Assembly (NCBI RefSeq): GCF_020745735.1
Contig: NC_083409.1
Coordinates: forward strand, 20,470,098 to 20,534,097
Reading direction: 5' to 3'
DNA: 64,000 nucleotides
Source: Hemiscyllium ocellatum
Lineage: Eukaryota
Below the pieces are notes generated by a model. It saw nothing but the letters and a program-made list of their open reading frames with translations. It did no database searches and was not told where the DNA came from. Positions 1-31,266 of this stretch are shown here, one piece after another (within the stretch, counting starts at the first letter, position 1; each line of letters begins with the position of its first letter). A program made the position numbers and the translations under genes.

Positions 1-95
1 TTCGATCCACGTGCCTTTCTTGCTTTGCTTCTTTTGACTTGAGTCTGTGGGTAGCTCAAACAAAACCCAATTTCCTCACTCTCAACCAGGCCCCT

Positions 96-600
96 GAAGA
101 GATTAGAGACAAAACAAACTGCAAATGCTGGAATCCAAGGTAGACAAGCAGGAGGCTGGGAGAACACAGCAAGCCAGGCAGCATCAGGAGGTGGAGAAGT
201 CAACGTTTTGGCTGTAACCCTTCTTCAGGACTGGGGGTGGGTTGCGGGGTGGTGGGGGAATGATGGGGGAGCTGCAGATAAAGGGAGTGGTGGGGGCAGG
301 GTGGTGAGATGGGGATAGGTGAAGATAGGTAGAGGGTGCTACCTGATTGGTTGATGGGAGGGATGAATACAAATTAATCTCTCCCATCGACTAATCAGGT
401 CATACTCTCTACCATTCTCAACCTGATGGGGATAGGTGAGGATAGGTAGAGGTGAGATGGGGATAGGTGAAGATAGGTAGAGGGTACTACCTGATTGGTT
501 GATGGGAGGGATGAATACAATTAATCTCTCCCATCGACTAATCAGGTCATACTCTCTATCATTCTCAACCTATCCCTACCTCAACACCCTGCTCCGCCCC
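96..600 (-). mobile_element. Penelope-like pLTR fragment with internal ~148 bp tandem duplication containing a hairpin
   Basis: pLTR with hammerhead motif at 199-231; unit starting tgagatggggataggtgaag at 305 and 453, each with an imperfect inverted repeat (ctacctgattggttgatgggag / ctcccatcgactaatcaggt). Confidence 0.7.
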
Positions 601-1394
601 ATTCCCTTTATCCCCTTTTCCAATCTTTCCTTATCACAGCCCAATCATTCCAGGGATCAATCGGGTAAAATTCTTGTGAACCACCTCCGATGCATTTATA
701 TTCTTCCTTCAATAGGGAGACCAAAACTACCCTCAATATTTGAGATGTAGTCACACCAATGTCCAGGAATAACTGAAACATCACAGTCTCACTTTCTGGT
801 CCTTAAGCATGCCTACTCTTACTTGTACCAGGCTTTTTACTGTCCATGTCTAATTGCCCTGGACCTGGTGGTGATTAGCTGCCTTCTTGAACCCCTGCAG
901 TCCGCGTGCTGTTGGAAGACCCACAATGTCCTTAGGAAGGGAATTCCAGGATTCTGACCCAGTGATGATATAGGAACAGCTTCATATTTCCAAGTCAAAC
1001 TGGTGAATGACTTGGAGAGGAACTTGCTGGGGTGATGGTCCCGTGTATCTGCTGCCCTTGTCCAAATATAAGTGGTCATGGGTTTGGAAGCTGTTGTCTC
1101 AGGATCTTTGGTGAATTTCTGCAGTGCATTGTGTAAATAGTACACAGAGCCGTTACTGAGCGTCGGTGTGGGGGGAATGCATGTGTGTGAATGCGGTTCC
1201 AATCAAGCTGGTAAACTTGTTTTCAACAATATTTAAATAAAATAATATAAAACAACATAAAATTAAATATAAATAAAACATTGCTGCGTTTGAGATACAA
1301 CATCACGGAACCCAAAAAGTTAATCCCCCTCTTCCCACAGAGGCTGCATCTGTTCCCTTTCTCCAGCATTGCGCTTCTATTTGAGATCTGCAGT

Positions 1395-1620
1395 ATTTTG
1401 TTTATGTATCTGTTTTAATGCCATTGGTTATAGGAGAAGCATTCATCAGCACACTGGGGAGATTTTCCCTGAGATGGTCACAAAGCCCTTATATTCACAT
1501 TGACCTGAGAGGGCAGTGGTTTAACCGATCACCCAGCAGATGGCATCTTTGCCTTTGCCAGCCTCAGGATAGTGCTCCAGTGTCTGGAGTGGGGCTTGAA
1601 ACCTGCAGGTTCAGGTGACA
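1395..1620 (-). mobile_element. Decayed Deu-domain SINE (SacSINE1/AmnSINE1-like) with CTCF-like motif
   Basis: The minus strand reads ggtttcaagccccactccag (tRNA B-box-like) … gttaaaccactgccctctcaggt … ctccccagtgtgctga … accaatggcattaaaacagat, resembling the Deu core as I recall it. CCAGCAGATGGCA at 1533-1545. Confidence 0.65.
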
Positions 1621-4529
1621 GTGTTAACACTGAACCCATCTATTCTTTTCTGGGATGTGGGAGTCACTAGCAAGACCAGCATTTGTTCCCCATCCCGACC
1701 TGCCCCGAAACTGAGTGGCTTGCTCGGCCTTTCAAATGGCAGGTAAGGGTCAGCCACATTGCTGGAGTCCTGGCAGAGTCAGACATCTACAACAGGTTTA
1801 CAAGAACAAGGCCCTTTGGCCCATTGAGTCAAAGCCAGTCAAACAACCACCTCACTATTCTAATTTCATGTTCCAGCACTTGGCCTGTAGCCCTGCACAC
1901 CTTGGCATCACAGCTGCACATCGAAATACTTCAATGTTATAGGAGAGTTTCTGCCTCAACCACCCTTACAGGGAGTGAGTCCCCAGACTGCCACCACCCC
2001 CCTGGTGAAAATGTGTTTCCTTATGTTCCCTCTTAACCTTTGGCCAATTATCTTTAATCTATGCCGCTCCGATCATTGATTATAATATAACCCCATGTCA
2101 CCAAGTGTCCCTTTATTGACACATGAACAGTCCTTGACTGTAATGCCTTAGAGAGAGTCAGGCACCGGAGGCTCGGGGTCTCTGACACTTAGCCTGTTTA
2201 TGTCAGTGAGGATTCTCCCTGTTATATCCTGGTAACGATTTGAGCTTTTCTTGTGAAACCCAGTTGGGAATTTTCATGGTTTTCCCACACACTCCCATCT
2301 CTCTTGATGCTCACCCTTGTCTGGTTAATTATTCCTATTTCCTCCTCCTCTATCAATTCATTCCATTTCAGTAAAGTCTGAGATATTTTCAGGGAGGATG
2401 TGCACTAGAAACCGCCATAGAGAAGCTCCCAGCCCTTCAATAGAAGGAAGGCCAATGTTTCCAGCAAGCCTGGACTCTACCCTTGTGTACCTTGCCTGAA
2501 GGATTCCATGTGATCTGTCAGCCTCCATCCCAGCCTGATAACCATCTCAGACATTGGAAGGAAAGGCCCAGGGAGCAGGTTAACATGGTGCAAAAAGCCT
2601 TTCAGCTGAAGCTTCAGTGTCTGCGCTCAGTGTGTATTATCACTTGTTCATTGCTCCGCTTTTACATGGTCTTGGAGAGAGAACTCTTGTTGATGCAGTT
2701 TTTTTTAGTGTGTCAGGATATTCAGAGCTGTGAGCATAGAGCAGTCACGTTCACGGACAAGATGGTAAGGTCCTACAGACAGGAAACAAATGACAAGACA
2801 AATCTGTTTTGGTGGCACGAGTTGAATTTTGAGCAGGGCCCCCCGAGGGAATCTCTTCAGAATGGGATCTTGTCGAGCCCCCTGAGGTGGGGGTGGGGAT
2901 GGTTGACGTATGATGGTGGTGGAGCCTCAAATGATGGTGCCAGAGACTGTGCAACTTTCAGCAGTGCACCCCGGTCTCAACCTGGATTCTGTTCTCTCAT
3001 TTCTGAGGTGGCTTTCAATCCGATGACCATTTTGACGATGGGGCAGGAGCATTGTCCATGGAGCCACGGTCAGTAACAATGTAAACTGTGTGTCTCTGAA
3101 GGCCTGAGTTTGCATCTCAGCTCGGGAGGATATCAGCTCATTCATCAAATCTGTTTCTGCCCCTCTGCAGGCTGACCAGGCTGCCGGTGCCTTTCCAACA
3201 CTCCCAGGTTTTCCCATGTGTCACAGCTCATTCTCCTGAGAGATAGTTTACTCGGAGTCAAAAAGTGTGTTGCTGGAAAAGCACAGCAGGTCAGGCAGTT
3301 GTGCTCAGGCTGAGGACATGATCTTGTCCCTCTGTCAGATCCTCTTCGAGAAACTCATGGCTCACCACCGCCCTCTCCAGGACAGTTAGGAAAAGGCAAC
3401 ACCCACCCCATCCCAGGAGAAATCAAAATAAATTACCAATAATTCAAATTATTAAATTGGTGAGGCTTGAATTCATCTCTTTGAAAGACTGGAGCCTCGG
3501 TCAGAAACAGAACCATGACACGGGTGACCCTGGTTTGTCAGACTGCAAGGTGGTGTGTCCTTCGGATTGACACTGGGCTCAGCAAAAAATGAATTACACT
3601 CAAAAGATCTAACAACTGGCTATCAAAGCGTGCCCCCAAACTGCACAGAACAGCACTTGAGGCTTCGCGCTCCCGTCTCCATCCTTGCTTGTTGACCTTC
3701 CCTGGGAAATATCTGGGAAGCACCTGACAGGTCATTCCCACTGGAATCCCCTGGAATAAGCCTGTGGGTTTATTCTCGGATAATGGAAGGAGTCATTACT
3801 CATTGTCCTCAGTTGAAGTGCACATTCGCTATAGTTACTAGAAGGCAGCTGTTTCACTGTGCCTGAACAATATAAAGTCAGAAGGCACACAACACCAGGT
3901 TCTAGCCCAACAGGTTCATTTGAAATCACAAGCTTCTGAAGTGCTGCTCCTTCATTAGGTGTTCTCCAGTCCACCATCGGTACCCCCACATTACTGAACA
4001 CTACAAATAAACTGGGACTCTGCGAGGATCTAATTGGCTCCATCTGCAGAAACAAGGCGAGAGAGAGAACAGCTTTCGGACCAGGATACTTATCGCACCA
4101 CAATGAAAATGCTCTGCATGCTATGATATATCAAAAAGAAGTACATTGGTGTGACTTTTGATTGTCTTCAAAACAAGTGCTGTTTTTTTTTCATTCTGTG
4201 ATACACGGAGACAATGTTAGTATTGGGTATCACAAAGTATGTTTCCACCATTAAACACTTCCTAACACACCCTCTCCATCCTGCTTTACTCCTTATTGAC
4301 TCTTCTACAATTGTCCCTGTTCCCTCACTCCATCCCGGTCCCACAGGGATCGATGGCCGGAGTTCATGACCCCGCACTTTATGAAGGTTGGTGTGAAGTG
4401 AGGCCAGTGTGTTGGATATTGGGCTCCTGCCTCAGGCCCAGGTGTAGGGGCCTGTTCAAAAATCTACACATTGTCCTTTGTCTCTTTCTGAGTGAACTGG
4501 ATCAAGTTGCAGTAATGAGCTGGCAACAA

Positions 4530-5650
4530 GGTGTCTTGTCTAAAATGTTCCCAGCATTGGGCACAAAACTGGCTGTGTCAGAGGAGACAGAGGGCAGTGA
4601 TGGGAGGATGGTTTTCAGAATGGAGGGCTGTGACTTGTGGGGTTCCACAGGGAATTCTGCTGTATATGGTCTACAGAAATGATTTGGAGGAAAGAGTAGC
4701 TGGTCTAATTAGTAAGTTTACAATTGATACAAAGATTGGTAGAATTGCAGATAATGAGAAGGATTATCTAGGATATGGCAGGATAGAGATCAGTTGGATG
4801 CTTGGACAGAAAAATGGCAGAGGTAGTTTAATCCAGACAAATGTGAGGTGATGCATTTTGAAAGGTGATGTACAGGTGGGAATTATAGAGTGAATGGCAG
4901 AATCCTTTGGGGTATTGATATGCAGAGGGATCTGGGTGAGCATATTCACAAATAACTGAAGGTGCCAGCACAGGGAGGTAAGGCAGTAAAAAAGGCTGAT
5001 GGCCTGCTTGCCTTCATTGGAAGAGGCATTGAGTATAAGGATAGACAAGTCATGCTGCAGCTTTATAGAACTTTAGTTCGGCCACACTTGGAATATGGCA
5101 TACTGTTCTGGTTGCATAGAACTGCATACAGTCCAAAAGGAAGGATGTGAATGTTTTGAAGACGGTGCAGAAAATGTTTACCAGGATATTGTCTGGTATG
5201 GGGGGATTGTAGTTCTGAAGAAAGGTTGGAGAGACTGAGTTTGTTTTCACTGGAATGCAGGAAAATGAGGTGCGTCCTGATAGAAGTTTACAGAGTTGTG
5301 AATGGGATAGGCAGAGTGGAAAATATGAGGCTTTTTCCCAGGGTGGAGGGGTCAAATACTAGGGGACACAGGTTCAAGGTGCAGGGGTTTGGGTGAATTA
5401 ATTGTACAGAGATGTACAAACCAAGTATTTCACACAAAGGAAGTTGAGTACCTGGAACACACAGCCAGAGGAGGGGGTGGAAGCAGACACAATAGAAGTA
5501 TTCAAGAAATACCTGCAGTAATGCATAAATAGGAAGGGAATAGAGGGATATGAATTCTGTCGATGAAGACAGTTTCAGTATAGAAGGGCAAAATGTATCA
5601 GCACAGGCTTGGAGGGCTGAAGGGCCTGTTCCTGTGCTGTATTGTTCCTT
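4530..5650 (+). mobile_element. CR1 LINE ORF2 3' fragment (mirror copy ~8990-10130, minus)
   Basis: KKADGLLAFIGRGIEYKDRQVMLQLYRTLVRPHLEY; SGVPQG-like and SKFxDDTK-like remnants. Confidence 0.85.
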
Positions 5651-6039
5651 GTCCTTTGGTCCCTGTTGTTGAATTGGATTCTCGGGAGCCAGCTCCGTAT
5701 GAAGAGCCTGTTCTCATTCTTTTGTTGGAGTTCATGGGGCAGCTGCTGCTTCCTTGCTACATCACTGATCAAACCAACAATGGGGAAAGCCTCTTGATAT
5801 TTTAAATACACTTTCTGCAGGAAAATGTTTGGCTGAGGTTTTAATATTGTTTAATAAGATAATGACATCAATACACCAGTGTTGTTTATGGCTGGGAACA
5901 TTTAACATCATAGTCCTTGTTTCAAATGGACTCTCACTCGTGATAATACAGTTTTCAATGTTTCTCTCCCTTTACGTGTTATGAAGAGATTTATCAACAT
6001 GTTTTGGTGAGGACTGTGCATCTTCATTGGAGGATTGGA

Positions 6040-7020
6040 AGATGATATCTTCAGGACACACGCACTAAACAATCCCACCACCCTGTGGCCGACCATTTCA
6101 ACTCCCCCTCCCACCTGCTAAGGATATGCAAGTCCCTAGGCCTCCTCCACCGCCAAATTGAAGCCATCTAACTACTAGAGGAAGAACACCACATCTTCCA
6201 CCTTGAGACCCTCCAATGACACGGAATCAATGTTATAGAGTCATAGAGATGTACAGCATGGAAACAAACCCTTTAGTCCAACCCGTCCATGCCGACCAGA
6301 TATCCCAACCCAATCTAGTCCCACCTGCCAGTACCTGGCCCATATCCCTCCAAACCCTTCTTAGTCATATACCCATCCAAATACCTCTTAAATGTTGCAA
6401 TTGTACCAGCCTCCACCACATCCTCTGGCAGCTCATTCCATACACGTACCACCCTCTGCATGAAAAAGTAGCCCCTTAGGTCTCTTTTATATCTTTCCCC
6501 TCTCACCCGAAACCTATGCCCTCTAGTTGTGGACTCCCTGACCCCAGGGAAAAGACGTTGTCTATTTATTCTATCTATGCCCCTGCTAATTTTGTAAACC
6601 TCTAAAGGTCACCCCTCAGCCTCACTAATGCCCTATACAGCCGCAACATGACCTCCCAACTCCTGTTCTCAATACTCTGAATGTTGATGTTACTTGTTTC
6701 CTCATCTCCACTCCCCCAGCTTATCCCAGATCCAACCCTCCAACTCGGCACCACCCTTTTGAACTGTCCTACCTGTCCATCTTCCTTCCCACCTATCCAC
6801 TCTACCCTTCACTCTGACTTATCACTGCCACCCCTCACCTCCACGTACCTATTGCAATCTTCACGACCTTGCCCCCAGCCCCAATTCCCTCCCATTTATC
6901 TCTCCAACTCCTCAATCCCTCCTCCCCATTCCTGATGAAGAGCTTATGCTCAAAACGTCGACTCTCCTGCCCAGGGATACTGCCTGACTGGCCATGCTTT
7001 TCCAGCACTACACAATTTCA
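6040..7020 (+). mobile_element. Penelope-like 3' fragment interrupted by a CR1 3' fragment (6235-6679, minus)
   Basis: GIY-YIG C-terminal remnant (…EEEHHIFHLETLQ…GINV) and pLTR/hammerhead at 6929-7010; the CR1 insert is flanked by AATGTT at 6229-6234 and 6680-6685 (probable TSD). Confidence 0.75.
6929..6962 (+). ncRNA. Degenerate PLE hammerhead motif
   Basis: CTGATGA-a-gagc(ttat)gctc-AAAA-CGTC; the GAAA box is mutated. Confidence 0.6.
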
Positions 7021-10000
7021 CTCTGTGCTGTGGTAACAGTGTGTTAAAGCCCAGTGCAGGTCATCTGTCATCTCAATCAAGTTACAAGGCCTAAGGTTGG
7101 TCAGTAATGTCTGGCCCCAGAACAATAACACTGACTGACTGGAGACAACCAAGATCAAATCCCAGTGAGAGTGTTATTGACCTTCACACTCAAAGCCCAC
7201 CAAGGAGGTGGTTGTTGTTAGTCTCAATATTGCCACAGATAAAGTTCTCCCAGAGATTCATAAGTCATTCTAGATTTTAAACAAGGGAGGGATGTTGTGG
7301 GGAGACAGATGGGAAGGCAGGGAGAGGAAACAAAAAGGAGAGAGAATTACATTTCTGTTACACCGTTCATGAGCTCAGGATGTTCAAAGATGTTTTACAG
7401 CTAATGTATACTTCCAAAGTCTAGTCATTGTTGTAATGTGGGAACTGTGATAGCCCATTTCCTCTCAGCAGGCTCCCACGATAACAGCGAACGATTGACA
7501 AGGATCTCAAGGATCGGACACGGAGTGGAGAATGGGATGGAATGGCAAGTGAAACCCAAGCAGCCAATGAGGCCTGAGTATTAGGCTGGGTGGAAGGGAG
7601 ATGTCAAAGGAAATGGGCTTCTTAAAATTCCTTCATGGGATGTGGGGTTCACTGAATGGGCCAGCATTTATTACCTATCCCTAGGTGCCCTGGTGAAGTT
7701 GGTGCTGAGTTGCTTTCTTGAACCGTTGCATCCATATGCTGTAAATAGACTCATGAAGCCTTTCGAGGGAAAGTTACAGGATTTTGACCCAATGGCAGTA
7801 AAGGAACAGTTCAAAGTCACGACGGTGAGTGACTTGCATGGAACCTCCAGGGATTGGTGTTCCCATATATCTGCTGTCCTTGTCGTTCCAGACTGCAGCA
7901 GTCATGGGTTTGGAAGGAACTATTTGAAGGACGTTTGATGAGCTGGTGTTAGTGGTACAGTTGGCTGGAAATGATTACTTCGTTACAGCCATGGTCATTC
8001 CCTTTCCTGTTATATCGGTGAAACCTGTCAATAAATAACTCCTGGTCAGTAATATCAACAACAACAGCTTGTATTAATATAGCATCTTTAATATAGTAAC
8101 CGTTCAAAAGGTGGGGAGATACGGTGTTTGTGTTGATGACCAAAAGGAGACCAAGAGTTTGTTCTAAGAAGTGAGAGGGGTTTGTGGAGGAAATCCCCGT
8201 GCTGAGGGCCTGGGAGACTGAAGGCACAGCTGCGAGCCATGAGGGGGAAGGCCAGAGTGGAGAGTTTGGGAGATGGGGTGAGGGATTGAGGATAACCGAG
8301 TGGTCCATTATATCATCTCCCCCACCTGCTGCAGCAGGAGACTGCGGAGAGGAATTGGGAGGCTGGGCAAGGCACCACCCAGAGGCTGGAGGCTGATACT
8401 GCAAGCAGGGTCCAAACCAGTTCTGCTGTGAGAAATTGGAGCAGGAGGATGCTTCCAATGCCAGTCCATCCTTTCTTAAATACAGGGACCAAAACTGCAC
8501 ACAGCCCTGCACGTGCAGGCTCATTCACACCCATTAGAACTGGTACAAGATTTCTCTATTTTTAAATTCCAACCCGCAGCAATAAAGGTTAAAATTCCAT
8601 TCACCCCCCCCCCCCCCATCCAGTGCCCGAGAGATTTGTTGGGGGGGCGGTGGAGTTGGGGGAGTTGTGTGGGTTGGGTGGGGGGGGTAATGACAGCAGT
8701 CTCTGACAGATGTAATGCTTAAAATGCTATCACTACAAGAGTGAAAAGGTAGGGTGGGGACACTGGCAGTGACCCCCTCCATAGGGAGAGGGGAAAGATC
8801 ACTGACACATTTAAAACTGTATTAACACAAGTGAGAATTCAAACAACCACCCACTCCATCATGAGTCTTCCCGCATTGTTGGTTTGATCAGTGACGTAGC
8901 AAGGAAGCAGCAGCTGCCCCATGAACTCCAACAAAAGAATGAGAACAGGCTCTTCATACGGAGCTGGCTCCAGAGAATCCAATTCAACAGCAGGGACCAA
9001 AGGACAAGGAACATTACAGCACAGAAACAGGCCCATCGGCCCTTCAAGCCTGTGCTGACACATTTTGTGCTTCCTCACTGAAACTGTATTCACCTACAGG
9101 ATTCATATCCCTCTGTTCTCTTCCTATCCATGTGTTCATCCAGGTATTTCTTGAAAGCTGCTATTGTGTCTGCTTCCACCACCTCCTGGCTGTGTGTTCC
9201 AGCCCCTCACGACTGTTTGTGTGAAATATTTACCTCACACATCTGTTTTAAATCCCCACCCCCACACCTTGAACCTGTGTCCACTGTAACTGACCCCTCT
9301 CCCCTGGGAAAAACCCTCATATTTCCCACTCTCTCCATGCCATTCACAATTTCATAAACTTCTATTAGGTTGCCCTTTAACCTTCTACATTCCAACGAAA
9401 AAAATTCCAGTCTATCCAACCTTCCTTCATCACTAAAACCCTCCATATCAGATAGCATTCATGGTAAATCTTTTCTGTACCCTCTCCAAAACATCCACAT
9501 CCTTCTGGTCATGTGGTGACTAGAACTCTATGCAAATATTCCAAGTGTGGCCAAACTAAAGTTCAGTAAAGCTGCGGTATAACTTGTCTATCCCAATCCT
9601 CACTGCTCCTCCCAATGTAGCCAAGAGTGCCATTGGCCTTTTTTTACTACCTTAGGTGCTGCCACCATCAGTGATCTGTGAACATGTACATCCAGATCCC
9701 TCTGCATTTCAATACTCCAATGGATTCTGCCATTCACTGTGCAGGTATTCTGCCACCTGTATTTCATCTTTCAAAATGCATCATTTCACATTTATCTGGA
9801 TTAAATGTCATATGCCATTTTCTATCCATGCATCCAATTGATCTATGTCCTGCTGTATCCTCTAATAATCTGATCATTAACTGCAACTCCAGCAATCTTT
9901 GTGGCATCCACAAACTCATCAATTAGACTAGCCATGTTTTCATTCAAATCACTAATGGAGACCATGAACAGCAAAGGTCCCATCATTGATCCCTGTAAAA

Positions 10001-10501
10001 CCCCACAAGACACAGTCCTCCATTCTGAAATCCATCCTTCCATCACTAACCTCTATCGCCTCTGACACAGCCAGTTCTGTACCCAGTGCTGGGAACATAT
10101 TAGACAAGACACCTTGTTGCCAGATCGTTACTGCAACTTGATCCAGTTCACTCAGAAAGAGAAAAAGGACAAGGTGCAGATTGTTGAACAGGCCCCTACA
10201 CCTGGGCGTGAGGCAGGGGCCCAAGTTCCAACACACTACACATGAAACTTAAGGCAGAGTGGGGTCATGACGTCTGTCCATATGTTCCTTTGGGACTGGA
10301 AAGGAGTGAGGAAATAGAGGCGATTGTAGAAGAGTCAATAAGGATTAAAGCAAGATGGAGAGAGAGTTTTGGAAAGGGGCTAAAGGAGGAAATAAACTTT
10401 TTGCCACCCAACGCTGACATAGTCTCCGTGTATCACATCATGAATAAAATAGCACACTGTGAGGACCATCAAAAGTTACCCAAAAGTTCATTTTTTTTAG
10501 A

Positions 10502-10805
10502 TTAGACTACTTACAGTGTGGAAACAGGCCCTTCGGCCCAACAAGTCCACACCGACCCGCCACCCATACGTTTTACCCCTTACTTAACACTACGGGCAAA
10601 TTAGCATGGCCAATTCACCTGACCCGCACATCTTTGGACTGTGGGAGGAAACCGGAGCACCCGGAGGAAACCCATGCAGACACGGGGAGAACGTGCAGAC
10701 TCCACACAGTCAGTCGCCTGAGTCGGGAAGTGAACCCGGGTCTCAGGCGCTGTGAGATAGCAGTGCTAAGCACTGTGCCACCGTGCCGCCCACCATGCCG
10801 CCACC
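10502..10805 (-). mobile_element. Full-length HE1-like tRNA-derived SINE (specific to the right arm)
   Basis: Head ggcacggtggcacagtgcttagcactgc…gggttcacttcc and CR1-like tail ending (ctaat)n; absent from the mirror position ~4140. Confidence 0.9.
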
Positions 10806-13684
10806 GTGCTATGATATATCTTTTTGATATATCATAGCACGCAGACTATTTTCATTGTGGTGCAATTAGGTATCCTGGTTAAAAAGATGTTTTCTCTCAC
10901 TCTCTCTCCTCAAATTTCAAATTAATCAGTTGGGCTAGAACCTGGTGTAGTGTGTCCTCTGACTTTGTATTGTTCGGGCACAGTGAAACAGCTGCTTTCT
11001 AGTTACTACGGAGGACTTGCACAGCTCCTGAAGACTATGGGTAATGACTCCTTTTATTAGCCACAAACACACCAGTAGTCATTCCAGTGGATTCCAGTGG
11101 GAATGACCAATCTGTTGCTTTGACCTAGTTCCCCAGTTAATCAGGCCATGGCTGACCTGGAATACATTCTCCCTTTGTCCTGTAAACCGTACTGCCCTGA
11201 GAAAATGAACATCGAAACTCAATCTCAACAACTTTTTATTTTGGATTGAGGGTTCCAGATTTCCATCACTCTGTCAGATGGAATTTTTCCTGAAATTGTC
11301 TGAATTACAATTTTAACAACCCTCTTGTTCTGGACTCTGGGACTGGAGAAAGCAATTTACATCAACACTGTTCATCGTGTCTGGGGAAAAGTCTCACTGA
11401 TGTAACCTGTTCTCTCTCATTAACAGATTTTGATCTCAAGGTGACATCACAGGCTGGATACTGAGAGGGTGGATCCTGTTATAGGGCAGATGAAAACTGG
11501 GGTCCGGTTTAACACAAAGCAGTCTCCCGTTTAAAGGGAAGGAGGGGTTTTCTTGCTGATGGTTGACAGTCTGTGGAATCCTCTTCTCTACATGGGAATG
11601 GAGGTTCACTCATGGAGTTGGCACAAGGTTACAGTAGACAGATTTTTTGATGAACAAGGCAATTAAGGATAATGGGAGGGGATGGGGAAGCAGAAAGTAC
11701 AGGTGAGACCATAACCCGATGAGCAGTGATCTTCTTCATTGGCGCAGCAGCTCCCAAAAGGCCTGCTCCTGCTCCTGGGCCCTATGTTCTGACAGAGGCT
11801 GCAGCAATCCTGGACCCCCATCTTTCCTTTGTCACTCACTGACAAAAATGACAAAAGTTAAAATTATTTTCTTTAACAAGACCAACTCAATTCTTGTTGC
11901 AGTCATTTTCTTTGCTGGCATTTAAGTTCAACAGGGTTTCAGAAACACGTCATTGTCTTATGTTGCAGTGGAGACAGACACAAGGCAGTGAGGCCTCAGA
12001 GAACACCGAGAGCTTTCACTCTGCACAACAAGGCTGTCAGCACAAGCATCTGGTGACAGGATTGTAGGGGGTTGAAAAGGAGAGAGTCACGGAGAAAAGA
12101 GACCTTATAGTTCAAAATAAAACCTCTTCATATATTCCCACACTCTAATGAATTAATGTTAGAGGATTAGAAACCCAGAATGGTGAGAGTGTGCTGGCTC
12201 AGAAGCTAAAAGGCAGAGAGCAAGGAGCTGCATTATTCCTTCTCATTATTATTTCTGCTTCATCATTGGCGAGCTACATAATTATTGCCCACCCCCAGTT
12301 GCTTGGACTAAGTTCTTTGCTGAGCCAGGTCATGGGGTCATTAAAAATGGATCATGTCACAGTGGGGCAGGAGTCAGACCAGGCTCCCTCAATGAAAGAA
12401 CATTTGTGAACATCACATTGGATTTCATGTCTATTTTGGACAGATTCCAGCGCCTTCCTTTCCAGACATTACATGGCTCATCACCGCCCTCTCCAGGACA
12501 ATTGGGGAAAGGCAACGCCCGCCCATTCCAAGAGAAATCAGGAGAAATGATGTAAAATTAAAATGATCAAACTGGTGAGGCTTGAATTCATCTCTTTGAA
12601 AGACTGGACTCTCAGCCAGAAACAGAGCCATGACATGGGTGACCCTGGTTTGTCAGATTGAAAGGTGGAGTGTCCTTTGGATTGACACTGGGATCAGCAA
12701 AAAAAATGAATTACACTCAAAGATTGAACAAACAGCTATCAAAGCGGGTCAGCAAACTGCAGAGTACAGCACTTGCAGCTCCGCGTCCCCATCTCCATCC
12801 TTGCTGTTGCCCTTCCCTAACTGTCCTGGAGAGGGCGGTGGTGAGCCATGAGTGTCTCGAAGAGGATCTGACAGAGGGGCAAGGTCATGTCCTCGGCCTG
12901 AGCACAACTGCCTGACCTGCTGTGCTTTTCCAGCGCCACACTTTTCGACTCCAAGTAAACTATCCCTCAGCAGAATGAGCTGTGACACAAGAGGAAACGT
13001 GGGAGTGTTGGAAAGGCACCGGCAGCCTGGTCAGCCTGCAGAGGGGCAGAAACAGATTTGATGAATGAGATGATATCCTTCTGAGCTGAGATGCAGACTC
13101 AGGCTTTCAGAGCCACACAGTTTACATTGTTACTGACCGTGGCTCTATGGGCAATGTTCCTGCTTCAGAGTCAAAATGGTCATTGGATTGAAAGCCACCT
13201 CAGAAATGAGAACACAGAATCCAGGTTGAGACTGCAGTGAATTCTGGCACCATGTTATGTATGGGATGTTCATTTAAAGCCCCACCAGCACCACCCAGAC
13301 CCCAATCCCTCCACCTCAGGGGGCTCGACAAGATCCCATTCTAAAAGAGATTCCCTTGGGTATCCTGCTCAATATTCATCTAATGCCACCAAAAGAGATT
13401 TGGCTCATCATTCATTTGCTGATTTTGGGACCTCAGCATTTTGTCTTGTGAAGGTGATTGCACTGTGCAGGCAGCTTTAAATATCTTGGGACGATTGAAA
13501 AAACACTGCACCAACAAGTGTTCTTTCTTCCTGTCACATAACAGGGGAGCAAATCAGTAACTGAAAATCCACACTGAAGGCAAACACTGAAGCTTCAGCT
13601 GAAAGGCTTTTTGCACCATGTTAACCTGCGCCCTGGGCATTTCCTTCCAGTGTCCGAGATGGTTATCAGGCTGGGATGGAGGCT

Positions 13685-15205
13685 TACAAGAGGCTGGAAG
13701 AACACAGCAAGCCAGGCAGAATCTGGAGGTGGAGAAGTCAACATTTCGGGTATAACCCTTCTTCAGAACTGCAGGTGGGGGTAGGGGGAGCTGCAAATCA
13801 AAGTGGGATCAGTTGTTTGGGTGGGTGGAGGGGAATGGTGGAGTGGAAGGTATTGAGTGATGAACACAGGTAGAGGGTTTGAAGTGGTTGGTTGATGGGA
13901 GGAATGAATCCATTTGGTGGTTGGAAGGGAGGGTCTGTAAGTGGAATAGAATGAAGGAGGGGGACAGGAAAAGGAGTCGAAAGTTGGGAAGGGAAGCTTT
14001 TTGAAATTGGAGAACTCAATGTTGATTCCTCTGGGTTCTAAGCTACCCCAGGGAAAAGATAATTATTTTTTCCTCCAATTTGCAGTCTGATTGCTTGTGG
14101 CAATGGAGGAGGCAGAGGATGGTCATGTCTGAGAGGCAATAGGAAGGGGAATTGAAATAGGCAGTGACTGGGAGGCCAGGTCAGCCTTTGTGAGCCTGGC
14201 TCAGATGCTCAGCAAAACATGCCCTTAGTTTATGTTTGGTCTCACCGATCCAGAGAAGACCACAACGGGTGCACCGGATACAATAAACTAGGTTGGAGAA
14301 GAGGCAGGTGAACCTCTGTCTGACCTGGAAGGACTGGGGCCCTGGATGGAAATGACAGGGGTGGTGTGTCGGCAGGTTTTGCAACTTTTACGGTTGCAGG
14401 GGAAGATACCAGGGTTTTGTTGGGGGAGGAGGGGGTAGGTGTGAAGTGTGGTGAAAACCAAGGATTGGCAAAGGGAACAGTCCTTGTGGAAGGCAGAGAG
14501 GGGTGGGGAGGGTAAGATGTTCTTGGTGGTGGGGGTCTAGCTGGAGTTGGCAGAATTTTTTGAGGCTGATATGTTGGATGTGGAGATTGGTGGGGTGTAA
14601 GTTGAAGACAAGGGGGACCCTGTCTTTATTGAATTTTGGAGGGGGGTGTTTAGATTTGGAGAGCAGAGAATGGAGGAGGTGTGGTGGAGGGCTTTCTGGA
14701 TGGCAGAGGTGGGAAAAGTATATTGTTAAAAATAGGTGGACATCTGGGACACTTGGGAGGGGAGCGTCTCCTCGTTCGAGCAGATGTGACGGAGATGGAA
14801 GAATTGGGAAAACGGGATGGTGTTCTTGCAGGATATTGGTTGGGAGAAGGTGTTGTCCAGGTAGTTGTGTGAGTCTGTGGGTTTACAGTAGATGTCTGTT
14901 CCTAGACTGTCACCGGAGATGGAAATGGGGTGGTCAAGAAAGGAGAAGAATTTGTCCAAGATAGACTACGTGAATTTAGGGGAAGGTTGGAAGTTGTTAG
15001 CAAAGTAGATGAAATGCTCCAGTTCAGCCTGGGTAGTGGATGCAGCACTGATGCAGTCACTGATGTAATGGCGGAAGATTTGGGGAACGGTGCCTGTGCA
15101 TGTACTGGTGAGGTGTTGTTTGATGTAGCCGACAACAAGCAGACATAGCTGGGACCCAGGGCCACCCACTGGATTTGGAGGAAATGGGAAGAGTTGAAGG
15201 AGGGT
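13685..15205 (-). mobile_element. 5'-truncated Penelope-like element (RT C-terminus, GIY-YIG endonuclease, pLTR with hammerhead motif)
   Basis: TDIYCKPTDSHNYLD…CKNTIPFSQF (PLE RT thumb); QSFQVRQRFTC…NLVYCIRCTRCGLLWIGETK…FAEHL (GIY-YIG); absent at the mirror site (2520) in the left arm. Confidence 0.9.
13737..13769 (-). ncRNA. Minimal type I hammerhead ribozyme motif (best-preserved copy)
   Basis: gtt-CTGAAGA-a-gggt(tat)accc-GAAA-TGTT-gac: both catalytic boxes intact, stem II 4 bp, stem I gtt/gac, minimal stem III, GUU triplet. Confidence 0.7.
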
Positions 15206-16084
15206 GACAGATCACATGGAAATGTTTGGAAAAGGTTCACAAGGACACAGTCCAGGCTTCCTGCAAACATCAGCCTTCCTTCTATTGTAGTGCTTCTTCA
15301 TAGGAGCTTCTCTATGGTGGTTTCAAGTACACATCCTCCGTGGAAATATCACAGACTTTACTGAAATGGGAAGAATTAACCAGACAAGGGTGAGCATCAG
15401 GAGAGGTGGGAGTGTGTGGAAGACTCTGTGCCATGAAAAAACCCCAAAGGAGTTTCACAAGAAAAGCTCAAATCTTTACAAGGATATAACAGGGAGATGA
15501 CTTACTGACATCAAACAGGTTGAGTGTTAGGGACCCTGTGCCTCTGGTGCCTAACTCTATATGAGACATTACAGTCAAGGATAGTTGATGTGCAAATAAA
15601 AGGGTGACTTGATGATGTGGAGTTATTTCATGATCAATGACTGGGGGCAGAGATTTGAGGGAAATGGCAGAAGATTAAGAGGGATGTAAGGAAACACGCT
15701 TTCATGCAGAAGGTGGTGGTAATTTGTAACTTGCTTTCTGTAAGGGTAGTTGAGGCAGAAGCTCTCCCATAACATTGAAGTATTTCGATGTGCAGCTACG
15801 ATGCCAAGGCATACAGGGTTACGGGCCGAGTACTGGAACACGGAATTAGAATAGTGAGGTGGTTGTTCGACTGGCTTTGGCTCATTGGGCCGAAGGGCCT
15901 TGTTCCTGTGGACCTGTTGTAGATGTCTGACTGTGCCAGGACTCCAGCAATGTGGCTGACCCTTGCCTGACATTTGAAAGGCCAAGCAAGCCACTCAGTT
16001 TCAGGGCAGTTAGGGATGGAGAACAAATGCTGGTCTTGCCAGTGACACCCACATCCCAGGAAAGAATAGACGGCCTCAATGGTA

Positions 16085-16300
16085 ACACCGTCACCTGAAC
16101 CTGCAGGTTTCAAGCCCCACTCCAGTCACTGGAGCACTATCCTGAGACTGGCAAACGTAAAGACGCCATCTGCTGGATGATCAGTTAAACCACTGCCCTC
16201 TCAGGTCAATGTGAATATAAGGGCTTTGTGACCATCTCAGGGAAAATCTCCCCAGTGTGCTGACCAATGCTTCTCTTATAACCAATGGCATTAAAACAGA
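16085..16300 (+). mobile_element. Decayed Deu-domain SINE, mirror copy, with CTCF-like motif
   Basis: Same sequence as 1395-1620 inverted; CCAGCAGATGGCG on the minus strand at 16176-16164. Confidence 0.65.
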
Positions 16301-19300
16301 TACAAGAGTAAAATACTGCAAATCTCAAATAAAACAAGATGCTCGAGAAGGGGAACAGGTGCAGCCGCTTTAGAGAGAGGAGGGAATAATGTTTTGGATT
16401 CAGTAATGTTTTATCAAAAAGACACCACAGTTTTTGATGATTTTATTCAATTTTAACCTGTTTTATGTTATTTTGTTTTATTCAAATCTTGTTTATCAAA
16501 TTTCAGCTGGCTTGATTGGCACCACATCGACATATATCCATTGCCTCCACATTGACCCTCAGTAACAGCTGTGTGCACTATCTACAAGATACATTGCAGA
16601 GGTTCAGCAAAGATCCTGAGAGAGCACCTTCCAAACCCATGACCACTTCCATCAAGAAGGACATGGTAGCAGGTACACAGGAACACCGCTCTTTGCACTT
16701 TCCCCTCCAAGCCATTCAGCATTCTGATCTGGAAATGTATCACTGTTCCTACATTGTTACTGGGTCAGAATCCTGGAATTCCCTTCCTCCGCACATTGTG
16801 GGTCTACCTACAGCACACTGCAGCGGTTCAAGAAAGCAGCTCCGCGCCACTGTGTGCATGACAATGAGAGATGGACAGTAACAAGGCTGGTGAAAAGTAA
16901 GAGTAGGTGTGATTAGGGATCTGAAAGTGAGAATGTGATGTTTCAGTTCGTCCTGGACATCTCAAGGTTTGTATGAACTTTTGGTCTCCTAATTGCAGAA
17001 GGAATATAAATCCATTGGAAGTGTTTCAGAGGAATTTTACCTGACGGATCCCTGGTATGAGGGGCCTGTGTGATGAGGAAGGATTGGAAAGGCTGGCCTT
17101 GTTCTCACTGGAGTTTCGAAGAGTGGGGGGTTTTCCTGTCCCACTGTATTCTCCAAACCCTTATCTGACCCCCTCTTGGGTCATACCCTCCTGCCCCTTA
17201 CTAACATGGAATTGGACTGCCCAGTCCTGAGGCTTACACCTTCCATCTGGAACAAAGTCTCAGGTATCGCTGCCCCTCCCTGATGTATCAGGATTCTTAC
17301 AACTCAGCTTCCAATCCAAACCCCCTGAGTGGGAGTTGCTGTAGATTTATACAGTCACTACAGATGTATTTACCCTGAATCATTTCAGTTTAATGAACAA
17401 ATGCTGATCCCACTTACAAATGAAAGAAATCAACTGTTTCATTAAACTAGTAATTGTCCTCAGTCTCTGGATCAATGTTTCAGTGCTTGTCATTTCTTGA
17501 ATTTCCCTATTTGAGGTTTCCTAAGCACACTATTTATATGTTTCTTTACACAAATCTCTTCCCAGCTGATCTGGTCAACAGACTCCTGTCCCCTTGTTTG
17601 TTATTTTGCTATTTTCAAACCAAGTGCATGTGCAGGCTCCCATCAGCTGAAGTGACAGTCAGTTCACCGAACTCCCACATTGACCAAACTTCCCAGCATC
17701 CCCCTCTATGCCAGCTGCACTGAGTGCCAACTGCAGGATATAGGCTGCCCTGTATTTATACTGGTGCTAATTGATATCACTTTGTGCTGTTGTTCTAATA
17801 GAGTCATAGAGATGTACAGCAGGGAGACAGAACCTTCGGTCCAACTCGACCACGCTGACCAGACATCCCAACTCAATCTAGTTCCACTTGCCAATGCTCA
17901 GGATCTGGGTTAAGCTCGCTCATTTCTCAGTCTGAAGCTTCCTTCTTTCAGCCTGAGAAATACGTTACTTTTACAACAAACGAATGTGACTTTAATGCTT
18001 GAATCTGTTTTGAAGATTAATGGGCTCAATGCTTTGATTCAATGAGGTAAGATATGAAATACCTGTGACACTTGTTATAATCCAGTCTTCTCTAACCAAT
18101 CTCTTCGGGGACCTGGATGAGTGTGAGGAGATTGGGTTTTGATGGAACTACCCACAGACTCAAGTCAAAAGAAGCAAAGCAAGAAAGACAGGTGGACCGA
18201 ATACAAGAGAGCACATTATGAGGGAAAACCAATTATTACCAAAGGAGAGAGCGACAACATTGAATTGCTTCTGGTGTCATCCTCTGTGCCCTAACGTTTC
18301 ACAGTGTCAGCTCCACATCCTTCCATTGGCTTTGTCATCGAGAGTCAACGATTCCCTTCCCACAGCCCTTTTTAAAATGCCCTGCCCCAGGGAATCACTC
18401 AGATAGAAAATATTTCACCTTTTCTGGGAAGGTTGGAGAAATATTGGATGTCGATGAGCTGCTTTCTCATACTTCAGGGTCTGACAGAAGGATGTGTGTA
18501 GTCTGTGGATTCTGGAGACAGATCACTGAGATATTCCTCACTCCCATCAACACCTGACTTTATCCTGACATCAGTTCCTATTCTTCAATATAAAGTACCC
18601 CCACCAGTTTCAGACTAGACATTTCACACCCAGCCCCCATTTCCTCACATTGGAATCAAGAACCAAACTTGCCCCATCTCAGGATTACCCTCTGAATGTG
18701 GTGTCAGTGTGCTAATGCTGTGTTTGAATGAAAGAGCCACAGTGGAATCTGGGACTGAATCCAAGGGGTTTCTGACCCACCAGCAGCCTCCCCGCTGTGT
18801 GAGATTCTGTTTCGATAAGATTTCAGCCCCATGGTTCCCACTGATACGAGAACCATGGAGTGAGATTGCTGGAGCCACGTGTGGACTGAGGAACACAACA
18901 GTCAGGACAATGAGCTGCTCTGGAATCCACCCTGAGCCCTGGATGGTTGTCACTGAGATGGCCCAGGGGCTACAGAATGTGACAGCAGAAAGTTTAACAT
19001 TGACTGTCCTCCCCAGCCGGGACTCCCAGACTCCCCCTGGACCGAACATTCTCAATCTGACCCCAGGGACACACGGGACAATTCCATCTCATTTGAAGAG
19101 TAAAGAAAACCCAAGTCTAATTTATGGAATATTTATTACCCAAACCCTGTGGAATTGTTATTCTGCGTTCCAAGATTCTGCTGATCATATTGATGAATAG
19201 AGTGTCCCCAGTGACCCTGATCTGAATTGGTTGGCTCAGGATCTTGCTGTCCCTGATGGATGGGTTGGTGTGGAGGGGGAATTGCCATCAGAATATTTTG

Positions 19301-20296: not shown

Positions 20297-20625
20297 CTAC
20301 ACACATTCTGATCTCCTGATGCTCTTGCTGAGGGGAGAGGGGAGGGTCATGTGGGTGAGGGCACAGGAGAAGCGAGCGTCGGATTCCCAGTCAGACCCAG
20401 AGAGGGTCAGCAGGCTGCTGACACTGTAGGTACTGTCCGAAGCTCGCAGGTAGTTGCTGGTCTGAACCCCGTCCGAAATGACTGCACCATCCTTCTTCCA
20501 CTGCACCTCCAGCTCATCAGGATAGAAGTGATTGGCAAGGCACACCAGGGTGGCAGTGCCCTTGGCATTGACCTGCTCCGGGGAGGGGGGCAGCAGGGTC
20601 AGCTTGGGCTGAGAGTTGTCACGGA
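20297..20625 (-). CDS. IGKC: Ig kappa constant exon (…RDNSQPKLTLLPPSPEQVNAKGTATLVCLANHFYPDELEVQWKKDG…FSCALTHMTLPSPLSKSIRRSECV*)
   Basis: Acceptor tctcttgtctttcAG at 20626-20627; C1-set Ig domain with both Cys, FYP and QWK motifs; C-terminal SECV supplies the H-L disulfide Cys; TAG at 20299-20297. The inferred J-C junction codon A|TC gives Ile. Confidence 0.98.
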
Positions 20626-22209
20626 CTGAAAGACAAGAGAAACAATTTTAATCCCTGCCTTTTGAAGGTACATAAACTCTCTGAACATTAACTGCTAAAA
20701 CATTTGAACATTTGTATCCAGTACCTAGCAGACCTGACAAAAGCACTGGCATTTTAAAAATTGCTTTTTGGGATGTGTATGGCACTGGCAGAGCCAGTCG
20801 CTGCCCATCCCTAATTGTCTCTGAGAAGGTGATGGTGATGCAGCAGAATGATAAGGGACAGTCCTGGACCACCATTTAAGGATTGAATGTGGGCAGCTGG
20901 AAGGGCTATCAATGTGGGAGCATTTTAGTGACAGTGATCGGACCTCAGTGAGATTGAGAATAGGGATGGAAATGGAGAACCGTGGAGCAAGTGTAAAAGT
21001 TTTCATTTGGGAACAATCCATTTTACCAAACTGTGTGGTAATTTGATAAAAGAGTACTGGAACCATCGACTTGATGGGAGATCAGTGACAGGGCAGTGGG
21101 AGGTCTCCAAGGATGAGACAGAGACAGAGATCATTCAGAATCTTTTCCCAAAAGAGTAAGAGTGGCACTCCCAAAGAGAGAGTCTCAGCAAAGATGTGAA
21201 ACTATCGATATGATGTGGAGGCTCTGGTGCCCGACTGGGTGGACATGTTCAGGAGTCACATGACACCAGGTTCCAGTCCAACAGGTTTATTGAAAATCAC
21301 AAGCTTTGGAAACTCTACTCCATCTTCAGGTGAAGCAACTTCAGTGCTGAAGGAACAGAGCTCTGAAAGCTTGTGATTTGAAATAAGCCTGTTGGACTAT
21401 AACCTGCTGTCGTGTGACTTCTGACCTCAAATGAAGTCCCGTTAGAGCACAATGAGAGAACTGTGTGCAGTTCTGGTCACCACATTGCAGGAAGTATGTG
21501 ATCCCCCTACAGATGGGGAGAGTAGAGGATTTTATCAGGAATGAGGAGTATTAGCTTTGAGGAATGATTGGTTTGGCTGGGACTGGTTTCTTTGGAACAC
21601 AGGAGGCTGAGGGGAGATTTGATCGATGGTGTGTAAAATGATGAGGGGTCTGGATAGAGTGGGTAGGAAGGACTGATTTCGATCAGCACAGAGGGCAATA
21701 ACCATGGAGAGAGATTGAAATGAATTGGGGGCAGGGTTCGAGGGGAGTTGAGGAGTAATTGTTTTCACCCAGTGGCTGGTGGGATCAGGACCTCACAAGC
21801 TGAAAGGGTGAGAGCGGCAGAAACCCTCATCACATTGAAAAAACACTTGGATAGTCACTTGAAACACCAAAGCCTCCAGAGCTATGGAGCAAGAGCTGGT
21901 ATGTGGGGTGGAATTCGACACCTCTTTAGCAAACCTCCGATCACTCACAGCTTGGGATAAGTTTATTCAACAACATTGGAGCAGAGTTGGATCAGCACAC
22001 TTCAGGAAGGAGTCACGTGAGGTGTCCATGGAGAAGGTTCTAGATTTTGTTTCAAATCTTCCAGCTCAGCAAGGTCAAATGTGAGGGTGCAAAGAGTCTC
22101 AGTGTCTTGGGATCAGACAGTGACACTGCTCTTAATGATCCCATGTTCCCTGGAAGATGGAAGTGTGTATCCAACGGGCAAGGGTCAGGTTCAGGAGACT
22201 CCAACCTCA

Positions 22210-30458: not shown

Positions 30459-30493
30459 TCAGTCTGAGTTTGGTTCCTTTACCGAACGTGTAC
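30459..30493 (-). CDS. IGKJ: Ig kappa J segment (YTFGKGTKLRL)
   Basis: FGxG motif directly after the heptamer; GTAAGT donor at 30458-30453 in phase 1, compatible with the C exon. Confidence 0.97.
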
Positions 30494-30532
30494 CACAGTG
30501 AGAGCTCCCAGTGTAGAGGCTGTACAAAAACC
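30494..30532 (+). other. J recombination signal sequence, 23-bp spacer (CACAGTG-23-ACAAAAACC)
   Basis: Perfect heptamer 30494-30500, 23 nt spacer 30501-30523, perfect nonamer 30524-30532; faces the V RSS, so joining is deletional. Confidence 0.98.
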
Positions 30533-30939
30533 TCAGCTCTCTGCTTCCCTCCATCACTCTCACCCTCTCCCTGTCTCCCAGTCTGTCGATCACTCTCACC
30601 CTCTTTTTGCCCCTATCAGTCTCTCCCTCATTCATGTGTCTTTCTGTCTCTGCCTCTGGGTTGTGAACTTTATTTTTTGTTGTTAAATCATGCAGATGTT
30701 CTTCACATGTGGCCATGCAGTGGAAGAGGGAAACCTGAGGCCTCCAGTGAGCGGTGGACACCACAGGGACTGGAGTGTGTCGTGGACAGTGACAATCCCA
30801 GCATGGGGTAATTTGTTCAGTTTCATTTAACTATAACTGTGGGATATGGCAGTTCAGGCAGTGGGACTGTGTGTCCATTATCATGCACTTTTTAAAACCG
30901 TGTGTGTGTCAGTACAGGAGGTGATTCTGTGTGCTTTGA

Positions 30940-30967
30940 GGTTTTTGTATGGCTCTGTATCATTGTG
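30940..30967 (-). other. V recombination signal sequence, 12-bp spacer (CACAATG-atacagagccat-ACAAAAACC)
   Basis: Heptamer variant CACAATG at 30967-30961, exactly 12 nt spacer, perfect nonamer at 30948-30940. V-12/J-23 is the kappa configuration. Confidence 0.97.
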
Positions 30968-31266
30968 GCGAGGGTTGCTGTAATCTTGCATACAGTAATA
31001 GTCAGCGACATCCTCATTCTGAACGTTGCTGATTGTCAGGGTGAAACTGGTTCCTGATCCACTGCCAGTGAATCGATCGGAGACTCCTGTGAATCGATTT
31101 GTTGCAGCATAGATCAGGAGAGAGGGTTTCTGACCTTCCCGCTGCTGGTACCAGCTAACATAGTTGCTCACAGATTGACTGGCCGTACAGGTGATGGTTG
31201 CAGTCTGGCCCAGTCCCACTGAGAGCACCGGGGGAGACTGAGTCATGATGATGTCCCCACTGATAC
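30968..31266 (-). CDS. IGKV: Ig kappa V exon, germline, open ([100 protein letters not shown])
   Basis: Pyrimidine tract and CAG acceptor at 31267-31269; conserved Cys23, Trp41 (WYQQ) and DYYC; kappa-type CDR3 ending in Pro; no stops; RSS immediately follows. Confidence 0.98.

What the first reader, a model, noticed from the sequence alone, without database searches (positions are those of the whole stretch)
1440..1625. Deu-SINE relic carrying a CTCF motif is a conservation peak in both palindrome arms (convergent CTCF pair)
Seen: 1440-1625 vs 16085-16270 differ at about 12 of ~190 positions (hand count), whereas nearby LINE sequence (840-1200) is visibly more diverged. Both keep CCAGCAGATGGC(A/G), forward at 1533-1545 and reverse at 16176-16164, i.e. 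convergent and ~14.6 kb apart. Established: this fits the CTCF core CCASYAGRKGGCR, convergent sites anchor loops, and Deu-domain SINEs (AmnSINE1) have been exapted as regulatory elements in mammals. Inference: an exapted SINE insulating adjacent Ig clusters, which could help restrict RAG scanning to one cluster.
Basis: partly seen in the sequence, partly recalled or inferred. Interest (0 to 1): 0.7.

Follow-up and report, generated by a model that had tools for sequence, protein, structure and literature searches.

The report
SINE relic with CTCF-like motif
A short, old repeat fragment downstream of a shark antibody light-chain gene is kept unusually alike in both halves of a large inverted duplication and carries a fair match to the binding motif of the genome-folding protein CTCF. 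The motif lies outside the best-kept core, however, and nothing shows that it is used.

Summary
1440-1625 and 16084-16269 differ at 10 of 186 positions (94.6%), against 83% for the arms as a whole. CCAGCAGATGGCA (1533-1545, +) and CCAGCAGATGGCG (16164-16176, -) are the only perfect CCASYAGRKGGCR matches in the 64 kb.

- The stretch is part of a wider 1375-1980 block (90%) that crosses several repeat fragments. It is one of five such blocks in the arms.
- The mismatch-free core is 1446-1525 (80 nt). The motif lies beside it, in 1526-1562, where 6 of 37 positions differ, which is the background rate.
- On a position matrix the sites score 12.3 and 14.2 bits. About 1-3 such hits per window are expected by chance, and a different motif in another block scores higher.
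- "Convergent" follows automatically from the palindrome. Each site points away from its nearest cluster.
- Raw reads of a related shark show the whole 3' flank at dozens of copies per genome, so it is part of the repeated cluster unit. They show no abundant SINE family at 80% or more.
- Deu-SINE origin has only weak formal support (nhmmer E about 0.1).

The cause of the conservation, whether homogenisation or a 3' control element, is unresolved, and CTCF binding is untested. Earlier notes of this scan report similar elements behind other kappa clusters of this genome.

The parts
1440..1625 (-). Left-arm copy of the element: a probable old Deu-type SINE relic, read on the minus strand.
   Evidence: 94.6% identical to 16084-16269. 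nhmmer hit of the Deu-like reference L001 at 1552-1446, minus strand, E 0.11.
16084..16269 (+). Right-arm copy of the element, about 4.0 kb downstream of the C exon.
   Evidence: nhmmer hit at 16158-16268, plus strand, E 0.074.
1533..1545 (+). CTCF-type core CCAGCAGATGGCA (19-mer 1530-1548 scores 12.3 bits).
16164..16176 (-). CTCF-type core CCAGCAGATGGCG (19-mer 16161-16179 scores 14.2 bits). The CpG form is probably ancestral.
1446..1525 (.). 80-nt tract without any arm-to-arm difference (partner 16263-16184). This is the true core of the peak and covers the Deu-like core GTTAAACC...TCCCCAGTGTGC.
   Evidence: 0.0003 such runs are expected at 83% identity and 0.2 at 92%.
1375..1980 (.). Ungapped high-identity block (90%) that holds the element together with neighbouring unrelated repeat fragments.
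1..18201 (.). Decayed inverted duplication (arms 1-5800 and 8858-18201, about 83% identical) lying 3' of the cluster.
20300..20647 (-). Kappa-type C exon (C1-set domain) of the neighbouring V-J-C cluster.
   Evidence: V-set exon lies within 30884-31387; J is at 30460-30486 with a 23-spacer RSS.

Best explanation
The 186-nt stretch is an old repeat relic, probably of Deu-SINE type, lying on the minus strand of the left arm. It sits inside a 400-600-nt block that has stayed about 90-95% alike in the two arms of a decayed 18-kb inverted duplication 3' of a kappa-type V-J-C cluster. The whole flank is part of a cluster unit present in dozens of copies per genome. The high identity is a property of the locus, not of the SINE or of the CTCF-like motif. 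The block crosses repeat boundaries, is one of five such blocks, and has its mismatch-free core (1446-1525) next to the motif rather than on it. The most likely cause is patchy homogenisation (gene conversion) among the many copies of the cluster flank. Selection on a 3' control element centred on the core may add to this. The CTCF-type 13-mer most likely arose by a few substitutions in the relic and is a mid-strength motif match with no demonstrated role. Shown here: the anatomy, the identity profile, the motif scores and the copy number. Inferred: the cause of the conservation, the SINE origin and the derived state of the motif.
For: Identity profile and block structure. Three comparable mismatch-free tracts (80, 76 and 70 nt) in different blocks. 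Six of the ten differences in the element fall in 1526-1562 around the motif. Raw reads of a related shark (1.9 Gb read) give an even baseline depth of 30-45 over 601-3600 and never near zero, so the flank is multi-copy as a unit. Depth over 1401-1600 is only 1-1.5 times that baseline, against about 2,800 for the LINE at 901-1200. Contigs of another organism are more like the window in the same blocks (1324-1688 95.3%, 2924-3211 96.9%) than between them (1846-2128 and 2283-2454 about 90%). PWM scores of 12.3 and 14.2 bits are met 3.3 and 1.2 times per window by chance. The homologous 19-mer of the Deu-like reference scores 3.4 bits and shares 9 of 13 core letters.
Against: The graded profile, with a perfect core and declining shoulders, also fits a constrained regulatory element. 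In the core both arms appear to carry the letters that the other copies carry: no well-supported differing letter is listed there, but that table is truncated. A recent arm-to-arm conversion of one diverged copy does not predict this. An unchecked note of this scan (s1-228512) reports a Deu-type relic about 4 kb 3' of C as a peak between other clusters, which, if it is the same element, would favour selection. The 12 core letters CCAGCAGATGGC are unchanged while both neighbouring letters differ, which motif-specific constraint would also produce (chance about 0.1).
Confidence: 0.45

Rival explanations
1. A 3' cis-regulatory module (enhancer type) of the kappa cluster. The Deu-like core 1446-1525 and its surroundings would bind lymphoid transcription factors, would be co-duplicated with every cluster, and would be kept by purifying selection. 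The CTCF-like motif would be incidental.
For: The perfect 80-nt core with declining shoulders. Its position 4 kb 3' of C, comparable in kind to the 3' enhancers of mammalian Ig-kappa (established knowledge). The same blocks stand out against contigs of another organism. Deu-domain SINE relics are documented enhancers in mammals (PMC3234267).
Against: No transcription-factor motif analysis, chromatin data or cross-family conservation is available here. About 22% of the arm lies in such blocks, which is a lot for constraint in a repeat-rich spacer. Homogenisation explains the same pattern.
Confidence: 0.28
2. One reading: an exapted SINE that provides a CTCF site 3' of each cluster. The convergent pair would anchor a loop or insulate adjacent clusters and restrict RAG activity to one cluster.
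For: Perfect IUPAC core in both arms, the only two in 64 kb. PWM scores above the threshold of 8 used for skate (PMC10115646). The core 12-mer is unchanged. A CTCF orientation code and loop extrusion exist in cartilaginous fish (PMC10115646). Each site could still stop extrusion coming from the far cluster. 8 of the 10 best PWM hits of the window lie in the palindrome.
Against: The motif lies in the most diverged part of the element. Its strength is of a kind expected 1-3 times per window by chance. Convergence follows from the inverted duplication: the two sites are one ancestral site, and an inverted pair must be either convergent or divergent. The loop would enclose only the repeat-filled spacer, and each site faces away from its own cluster, whereas a better-scoring divergent pair exists at 3366(-)/12822(+). 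The exact right-arm words around the motif were found only in runs of one organism (weak, 5 words). V-J distance is 0.4 kb.
Confidence: 0.12
3. The CAGATG E-box inside CCAGCAGATGGC, rather than CTCF, is the relevant site, for example for E-protein binding as in Ig enhancers.
For: The sequence shows a CAGATG E-box directly. E-boxes are standard parts of Ig enhancers (established knowledge).
Against: A 6-mer occurs everywhere by chance, its neighbours diverge, and no test was possible.
Confidence: 0.05

Closest known systems
CTCF-binding elements 3' of mammalian antigen-receptor loci (IgH 3' CBEs; Cer/Sis and downstream CBEs of Ig-kappa)
   Same: A CTCF-type motif downstream of a constant-region exon, at the edge of a recombining unit. 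It is proposed to limit cohesin-driven contacts.
   Different: The mammalian sites are strong, clustered, shown by ChIP, and face into the locus. Here there is one mid-strength motif per arm, facing away from its nearest cluster, with no occupancy data, in a minilocus whose V and J are 0.4 kb apart.
SINE-borne CTCF sites (rodent B2 and similar retrotransposon waves)
   Same: A CTCF-type motif lying inside a SINE-derived sequence.
   Different: In B2 the motif is part of the SINE consensus and was spread by transposition. Here the one available Deu-like reference lacks it (3.4 bits, 9 of 13 core letters), so it looks acquired after insertion. The copies arose by segmental duplication of the cluster flank, not by retroposition.
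AmnSINE1 / Deu-SINE-derived conserved non-coding elements (e.g. AS021 near Satb2, PMC3234267)
   Same: An old Deu-type relic whose Deu-like core is the best-kept part, near a developmentally regulated gene.
   Different: The mammalian cases are single-copy orthologous elements conserved across orders, with reporter-proven enhancer activity. Here conservation is shown only between paralogous copies and close relatives, and gene conversion is not excluded.
Large palindromes kept alike by arm-to-arm gene conversion (e.g. sex-chromosome palindromes)
   Same: Inverted duplication with stretches of raised arm-to-arm identity.
   Different: Those arms are over 99.9% identical throughout. Here the arms have decayed to 83%, with only five short patches of 90-95%.

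Membership tests
CTCF-binding site / insulator | Match to the CTCF core motif | tested here: met
   13 of 13 to CCASYAGRKGGCR in both arms. This is mid-strength, not top-tier.
CTCF-binding site / insulator | Motif conserved above its flanks | tested here: inconclusive
   12 of 13 letters are identical between the arms, with the change at the R position. Six of 37 positions differ in 1526-1562, and an unchanged 12-mer has a chance of about 0.1 at background divergence.
CTCF-binding site / insulator | Orientation fitting a boundary between domains (sites facing their own domain, divergent at the boundary) | tested here: not met
   The pair is convergent across the spacer, and each site points away from the nearest cluster. 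The divergent tendency at skate boundaries is reported in PMC10115646.
CTCF-binding site / insulator | CTCF/cohesin occupancy and insulation | not testable with these tools
   No ChIP, ATAC or Hi-C data were available.
DeuSINE superfamily | Sequence similarity to the Deu-domain | tested here: inconclusive
   No Repbase or Dfam consensus was available. A Deu-like reference (L001, found with a remembered pattern) gives the two copies as the top nhmmer hits of the window at E 0.074 and 0.11, with 64 of 113 aligned columns identical.
DeuSINE superfamily | Pol III head (tRNA or 5S) 5' of the domain | tested here: not met
   ARAGORN found no tRNA. Rfam found nothing at E up to 10 on 1350-1750. There is only a visual resemblance to box A/B at 1640-1575 on the minus strand.
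DeuSINE superfamily | Dispersed multi-copy family | tested here: not met
   There is no other copy in the window. Read depth over 1401-1600 is only 1-1.5 times the flank's baseline at 80% likeness or more. This fits an old relic and does not exclude one.
Exapted SINE conserved element (AmnSINE1 type) | Slower evolution than neutral flanks between species | tested here: inconclusive
   Contigs of another organism are 95-97% like the window in the blocks against about 90% between them, but paralogy and homogenisation are not separated from constraint.
Inverted duplication (palindrome) | Colinear reverse-complement arms | tested here: met

The most novel reading that the evidence does not exclude
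Every kappa-type minilocus of this shark carries, about 4 kb behind its C exon, a selectively kept module built from an ancient Deu-type SINE. The module works as a per-cluster control element, either a 3' enhancer or, with its CTCF-type site, a loop anchor. That would make it the first cis-element defined for cluster-type antibody loci and a handle on how such loci keep rearrangement and expression within one cluster.
Probability: 0.2. Interest if true: 0.65.

Novelty: new member of a known kind. Interest (0 to 1): 0.3.

Why it matters
How sharks, with dozens of separate V-J-C miniloci, confine rearrangement and expression to single clusters is an open question, and to my knowledge no control element of such loci has been defined. 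My literature search found no paper on CTCF in shark Ig clusters. A conserved module 3' of C would be a concrete test object. On present evidence the CTCF reading is weak. The useful result is the map: an 80-nt invariant core beside the motif rather than on it, five conserved blocks, and a flank repeated dozens of times.

Tried and rejected
- Deu-SINE consensus: not obtainable. Nishihara 2006 is not held. The MetaSINE paper has no supplements held. A literal-sequence paper search found nothing. Scans of genome contigs and viral contigs with remembered Deu patterns found nothing.
- Strict local alignment to L001 alone: only z = 2-3. A permissive Smith-Waterman scan of the window did not rank the element first, so only nhmmer supports the link.
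- Other clusters' 3' flanks through protein look-ups: the C-exon search gave few hits. The one long catshark contig had no DNA served. An ORF overlapping the element found no relatives.
- Small-RNA or structured-RNA reading: rejected. There are no Rfam hits and fold z-scores run from -1.7 to +0.7.
- Coding reading: rejected. Only short, non-conserved ORFs are present.
- Young abundant SINE: rejected on read depth.
- Read laying lists only 40 of 589 differing places, so a full per-position profile across copies could not be made.

Full report
**Context.** The window holds one unrearranged kappa-type light-chain cluster on the minus strand.
- The V-set exon lies within 30884-31387.
- J is at 30460-30486, with a 23-spacer recombination signal at 30494-32.
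- The C1-set exon is at 20300-20647.
- V and J are about 0.4 kb apart, and J and C about 10 kb apart.
- From about 2 kb downstream of C, the stretch 1-18201 is a decayed inverted duplication, with arms 1-5800 and 8858-18201.
- The right-arm copy of the element lies 4.0 kb behind C.

**The observation.** A global alignment of the arms gives 83.0% identity overall and 79.0% for the LINE stretch 840-1200.
- 1440-1625 pairs without gaps with 16269-16084, at 176 of 186 positions (94.6%).
- This is far above the arm average (Fisher p = 2e-6) and within the top 0.3% of 186-nt windows.
- CCAGCAGATGGCA at 1533-1545 (+) and CCAGCAGATGGCG at 16164-16176 (-) are the only perfect matches to CCASYAGRKGGCR in the window.

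**What the peak really is.** Four points qualify the observation.
- The stretch belongs to an ungapped block, 1375-1980, that is 90% identical. The bins 1401-1800 are 88-94%.
- That block runs across at least three unrelated sequence types: the element, a different repeat from about 1640, and another at 1801-1900. These have different read depths. The conservation therefore does not follow the borders of the SINE.
- It is one of five blocks. The others are 2501-2600, 3001-3400, 4401-4600 and 5601-5800, at 90-95%. Together they cover about a fifth of the arm.
- There are three long mismatch-free tracts: 1446-1525 (80 nt), 5685-5760 (76 nt) and 3137-3206 (70 nt). At 83% identity, 0.0003 runs of 80 nt are expected.

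The 80-nt tract ends just before the CTCF-type motif. Six of the ten differences in the element fall in 1526-1562 (at 1526, 1532, 1545, 1551, 1553 and 1562), so that sub-stretch is 84% identical, which is the background level. The twelve letters CCAGCAGATGGC are unchanged, but the chance of that at background divergence is about 0.1.

**Copy number and relatives.** I laid reads and contigs of four runs on 601-3600 at 80% likeness.
- Raw genomic reads of organism D (1.9 Gb read, about 4% of the run) gave an even depth of 30-45 in all "unique" bins, and never near zero.
- At well under one-fold genome coverage (my estimate), this means that the whole 3-kb flank exists in dozens of copies, perhaps about a hundred. 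It is part of a repeated cluster unit.
- 1401-1600 has only 1-1.5 times that baseline. The LINE at 901-1200 has about 2,800, and a 37-nt piece at 3262-3298 has about 29,000.
- So there is no abundant SINE family within 80% of the element. If it is a SINE, it is an old relic.
- In all four runs essentially every read or contig carries G, G and T at 1444, 1445 and 1532. These are private changes of the left arm, and the right arm has the common letters.
- Contigs of organism B are 95.3% like the window over 1324-1688, 96.9% over 2924-3211 and 93.8% over 2492-2668, but only about 90% over 1846-2128 and 2283-2454. The same blocks therefore stand out against other copies.
- This does not separate selection from homogenisation. 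Where copies are homogenised, the window copy stays near the family consensus. Elsewhere its private changes add to the distance.
- The differences table was truncated to 40 of 589 rows, so no full profile could be made.
- Exact right-arm words around the motif were found only in runs of organism A, which is probably the source species (only 5 words, so this is weak).

**SINE origin.** No Repbase or Dfam consensus is reachable with these tools.
- Read on the minus strand, the element shows GTTAAACC...CTCTCAGGT...TCCCCAGTGTGCTGA. I recognised this from memory as Deu-domain-like. That is a lead, not a test.
- nhmmer with 161 nt of L001 against the whole window, both strands, returns the two copies of the element as the two best hits. 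They are colinear over reference positions 27-148, but only at E 0.074 and 0.11.
- MAFFT aligns 64 of 113 columns identically. The identical columns include flanks that were not used in the search pattern (GATGCC.TC...TGG upstream, TCCCCAGTGT.CTG downstream).
- A strict local alignment gives only z = 2-3.
- ARAGORN and Rfam find no tRNA or 5S head.
- I rate a Deu-type origin at about 65-70%.

At the place of the motif L001 has CCAAAGGACGGCA. This shares 9 of the 13 core letters and scores 3.4 bits, against 12.3 and 14.2 for the window's sites. On this single reference, the motif was acquired by about four substitutions after insertion and is not part of the domain. The A/G difference at 1545 is a CpG-to-CpA change, so the right-arm form is probably ancestral (inference).

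**Strength and geometry of the motif.** Column sums are about 908-913, the memory-derived status is flagged, and PMC10115646 uses the same matrix for skate.
- The 19-mers score 12.3 bits (left arm) and 14.2 bits (right arm).
- In 3 Mb of first-order Markov sequence scanned on both strands, such scores occur 3.3 and 1.2 times per window equivalent.
- They rank eighth and fifth in the window.
- Three identical 19-mers, TGTCCTGGAGAGGGCGGTG at 3366-3384 (-), 12822-12840 (+) and 12482-12500 (-), score 16.6 bits. They lie inside another high-identity block.
- Eight of the ten best hits of the window lie in the palindrome. That is more than its share of the window, but I noticed this only after the scan.

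The two sites are one ancestral site copied in inverted orientation, which must end up either convergent or divergent. A loop between them would enclose only the repeat-filled spacer. Each site faces away from its nearest cluster, so by the orientation rule it would halt extrusion coming from the far side, not from its own cluster. In skate, CTCF motifs point into domains and boundaries tend to carry divergent sites (PMC10115646).

**Other readings.**
- There is no RNA family and no unusual fold.
- There is no conserved ORF.
- The motif contains a CAGATG E-box, which cannot be assessed here.

**Explanation.** The most likely reading (0.45) is that the identity peak reflects patchy homogenisation among the many copies of a co-duplicated cluster flank, with the CTCF-type 13-mer an unproven, mid-strength by-product of mutation in an old SINE relic. 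A selectively kept 3' control module centred on 1446-1525 is a serious rival (0.28). Three things speak for it:
- the profile of a perfect core with declining shoulders;
- both arms apparently carrying the family's common letters in the core;
- an unchecked note of this scan that a Deu-type relic is a peak about 4 kb behind C at another cluster pair.

**Earlier notes of this scan.** These are unchecked leads. Two follow-up reports describe CTCF-type motifs behind or between other light-chain clusters of this genome as copies on inverted duplications, present behind only part of the clusters, with binding untested. Whether those are this motif or the 16.6-bit one I could not see.

**Verdict.** This is a real feature and an ordinary kind of candidate.

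Noticed in passing
window 3366-3384 (-), 12822-12840 (+), 12482-12500 (-): Three identical 19-mers, TGTCCTGGAGAGGGCGGTG, are the best CTCF-matrix hits of the window (16.6 bits). They lie in the 3001-3400 / 12806-13205 high-identity block. The 3366(-)/12822(+) pair is divergent, so each site faces its own cluster, which is the usual boundary arrangement.
   Followed up: partly
window 3262-3298: A 37-nt piece of an extremely abundant repeat. Depth is about 29,000 in 1.9 Gb of raw reads of a related shark, with many opposite-strand joints at 3295-3298.
   Followed up: no
window 5685-5760 and 3137-3206: Two further mismatch-free arm-to-arm tracts (76 and 70 nt), comparable to the one in the element. 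Their content is unexplained.
   Followed up: no
window 30460-30532 and 30884-31387 (-): Unrearranged V and J only about 0.4 kb apart. J (WYTFGKGTKLRL) has a 23-spacer signal. C lies 10 kb further on.
   Followed up: partly
window 36592-37500 vs 62049-61123: A second inverted pair (83% over 0.9 kb), upstream of V. It overlaps another first-reader note on a candidate enhancer.
   Followed up: no
proteins P0001, P0002: C-kappa-like proteins 78-83% identical to this shark's C exon are filed under Aeromonas veronii and Salmonella enterica. This is probably host DNA in bacterial assemblies.
   Followed up: no
L001 2440-2600: Metagenome contig MDSQ01060886.1 carries a fish-type Deu-like SINE module next to what looks like a coding exon end, so there is eukaryotic DNA in a metagenome.
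   Followed up: partly
window 283-571: A tandem duplication of about 144 nt (92% identical) near the outer end of the left arm.
   Followed up: no
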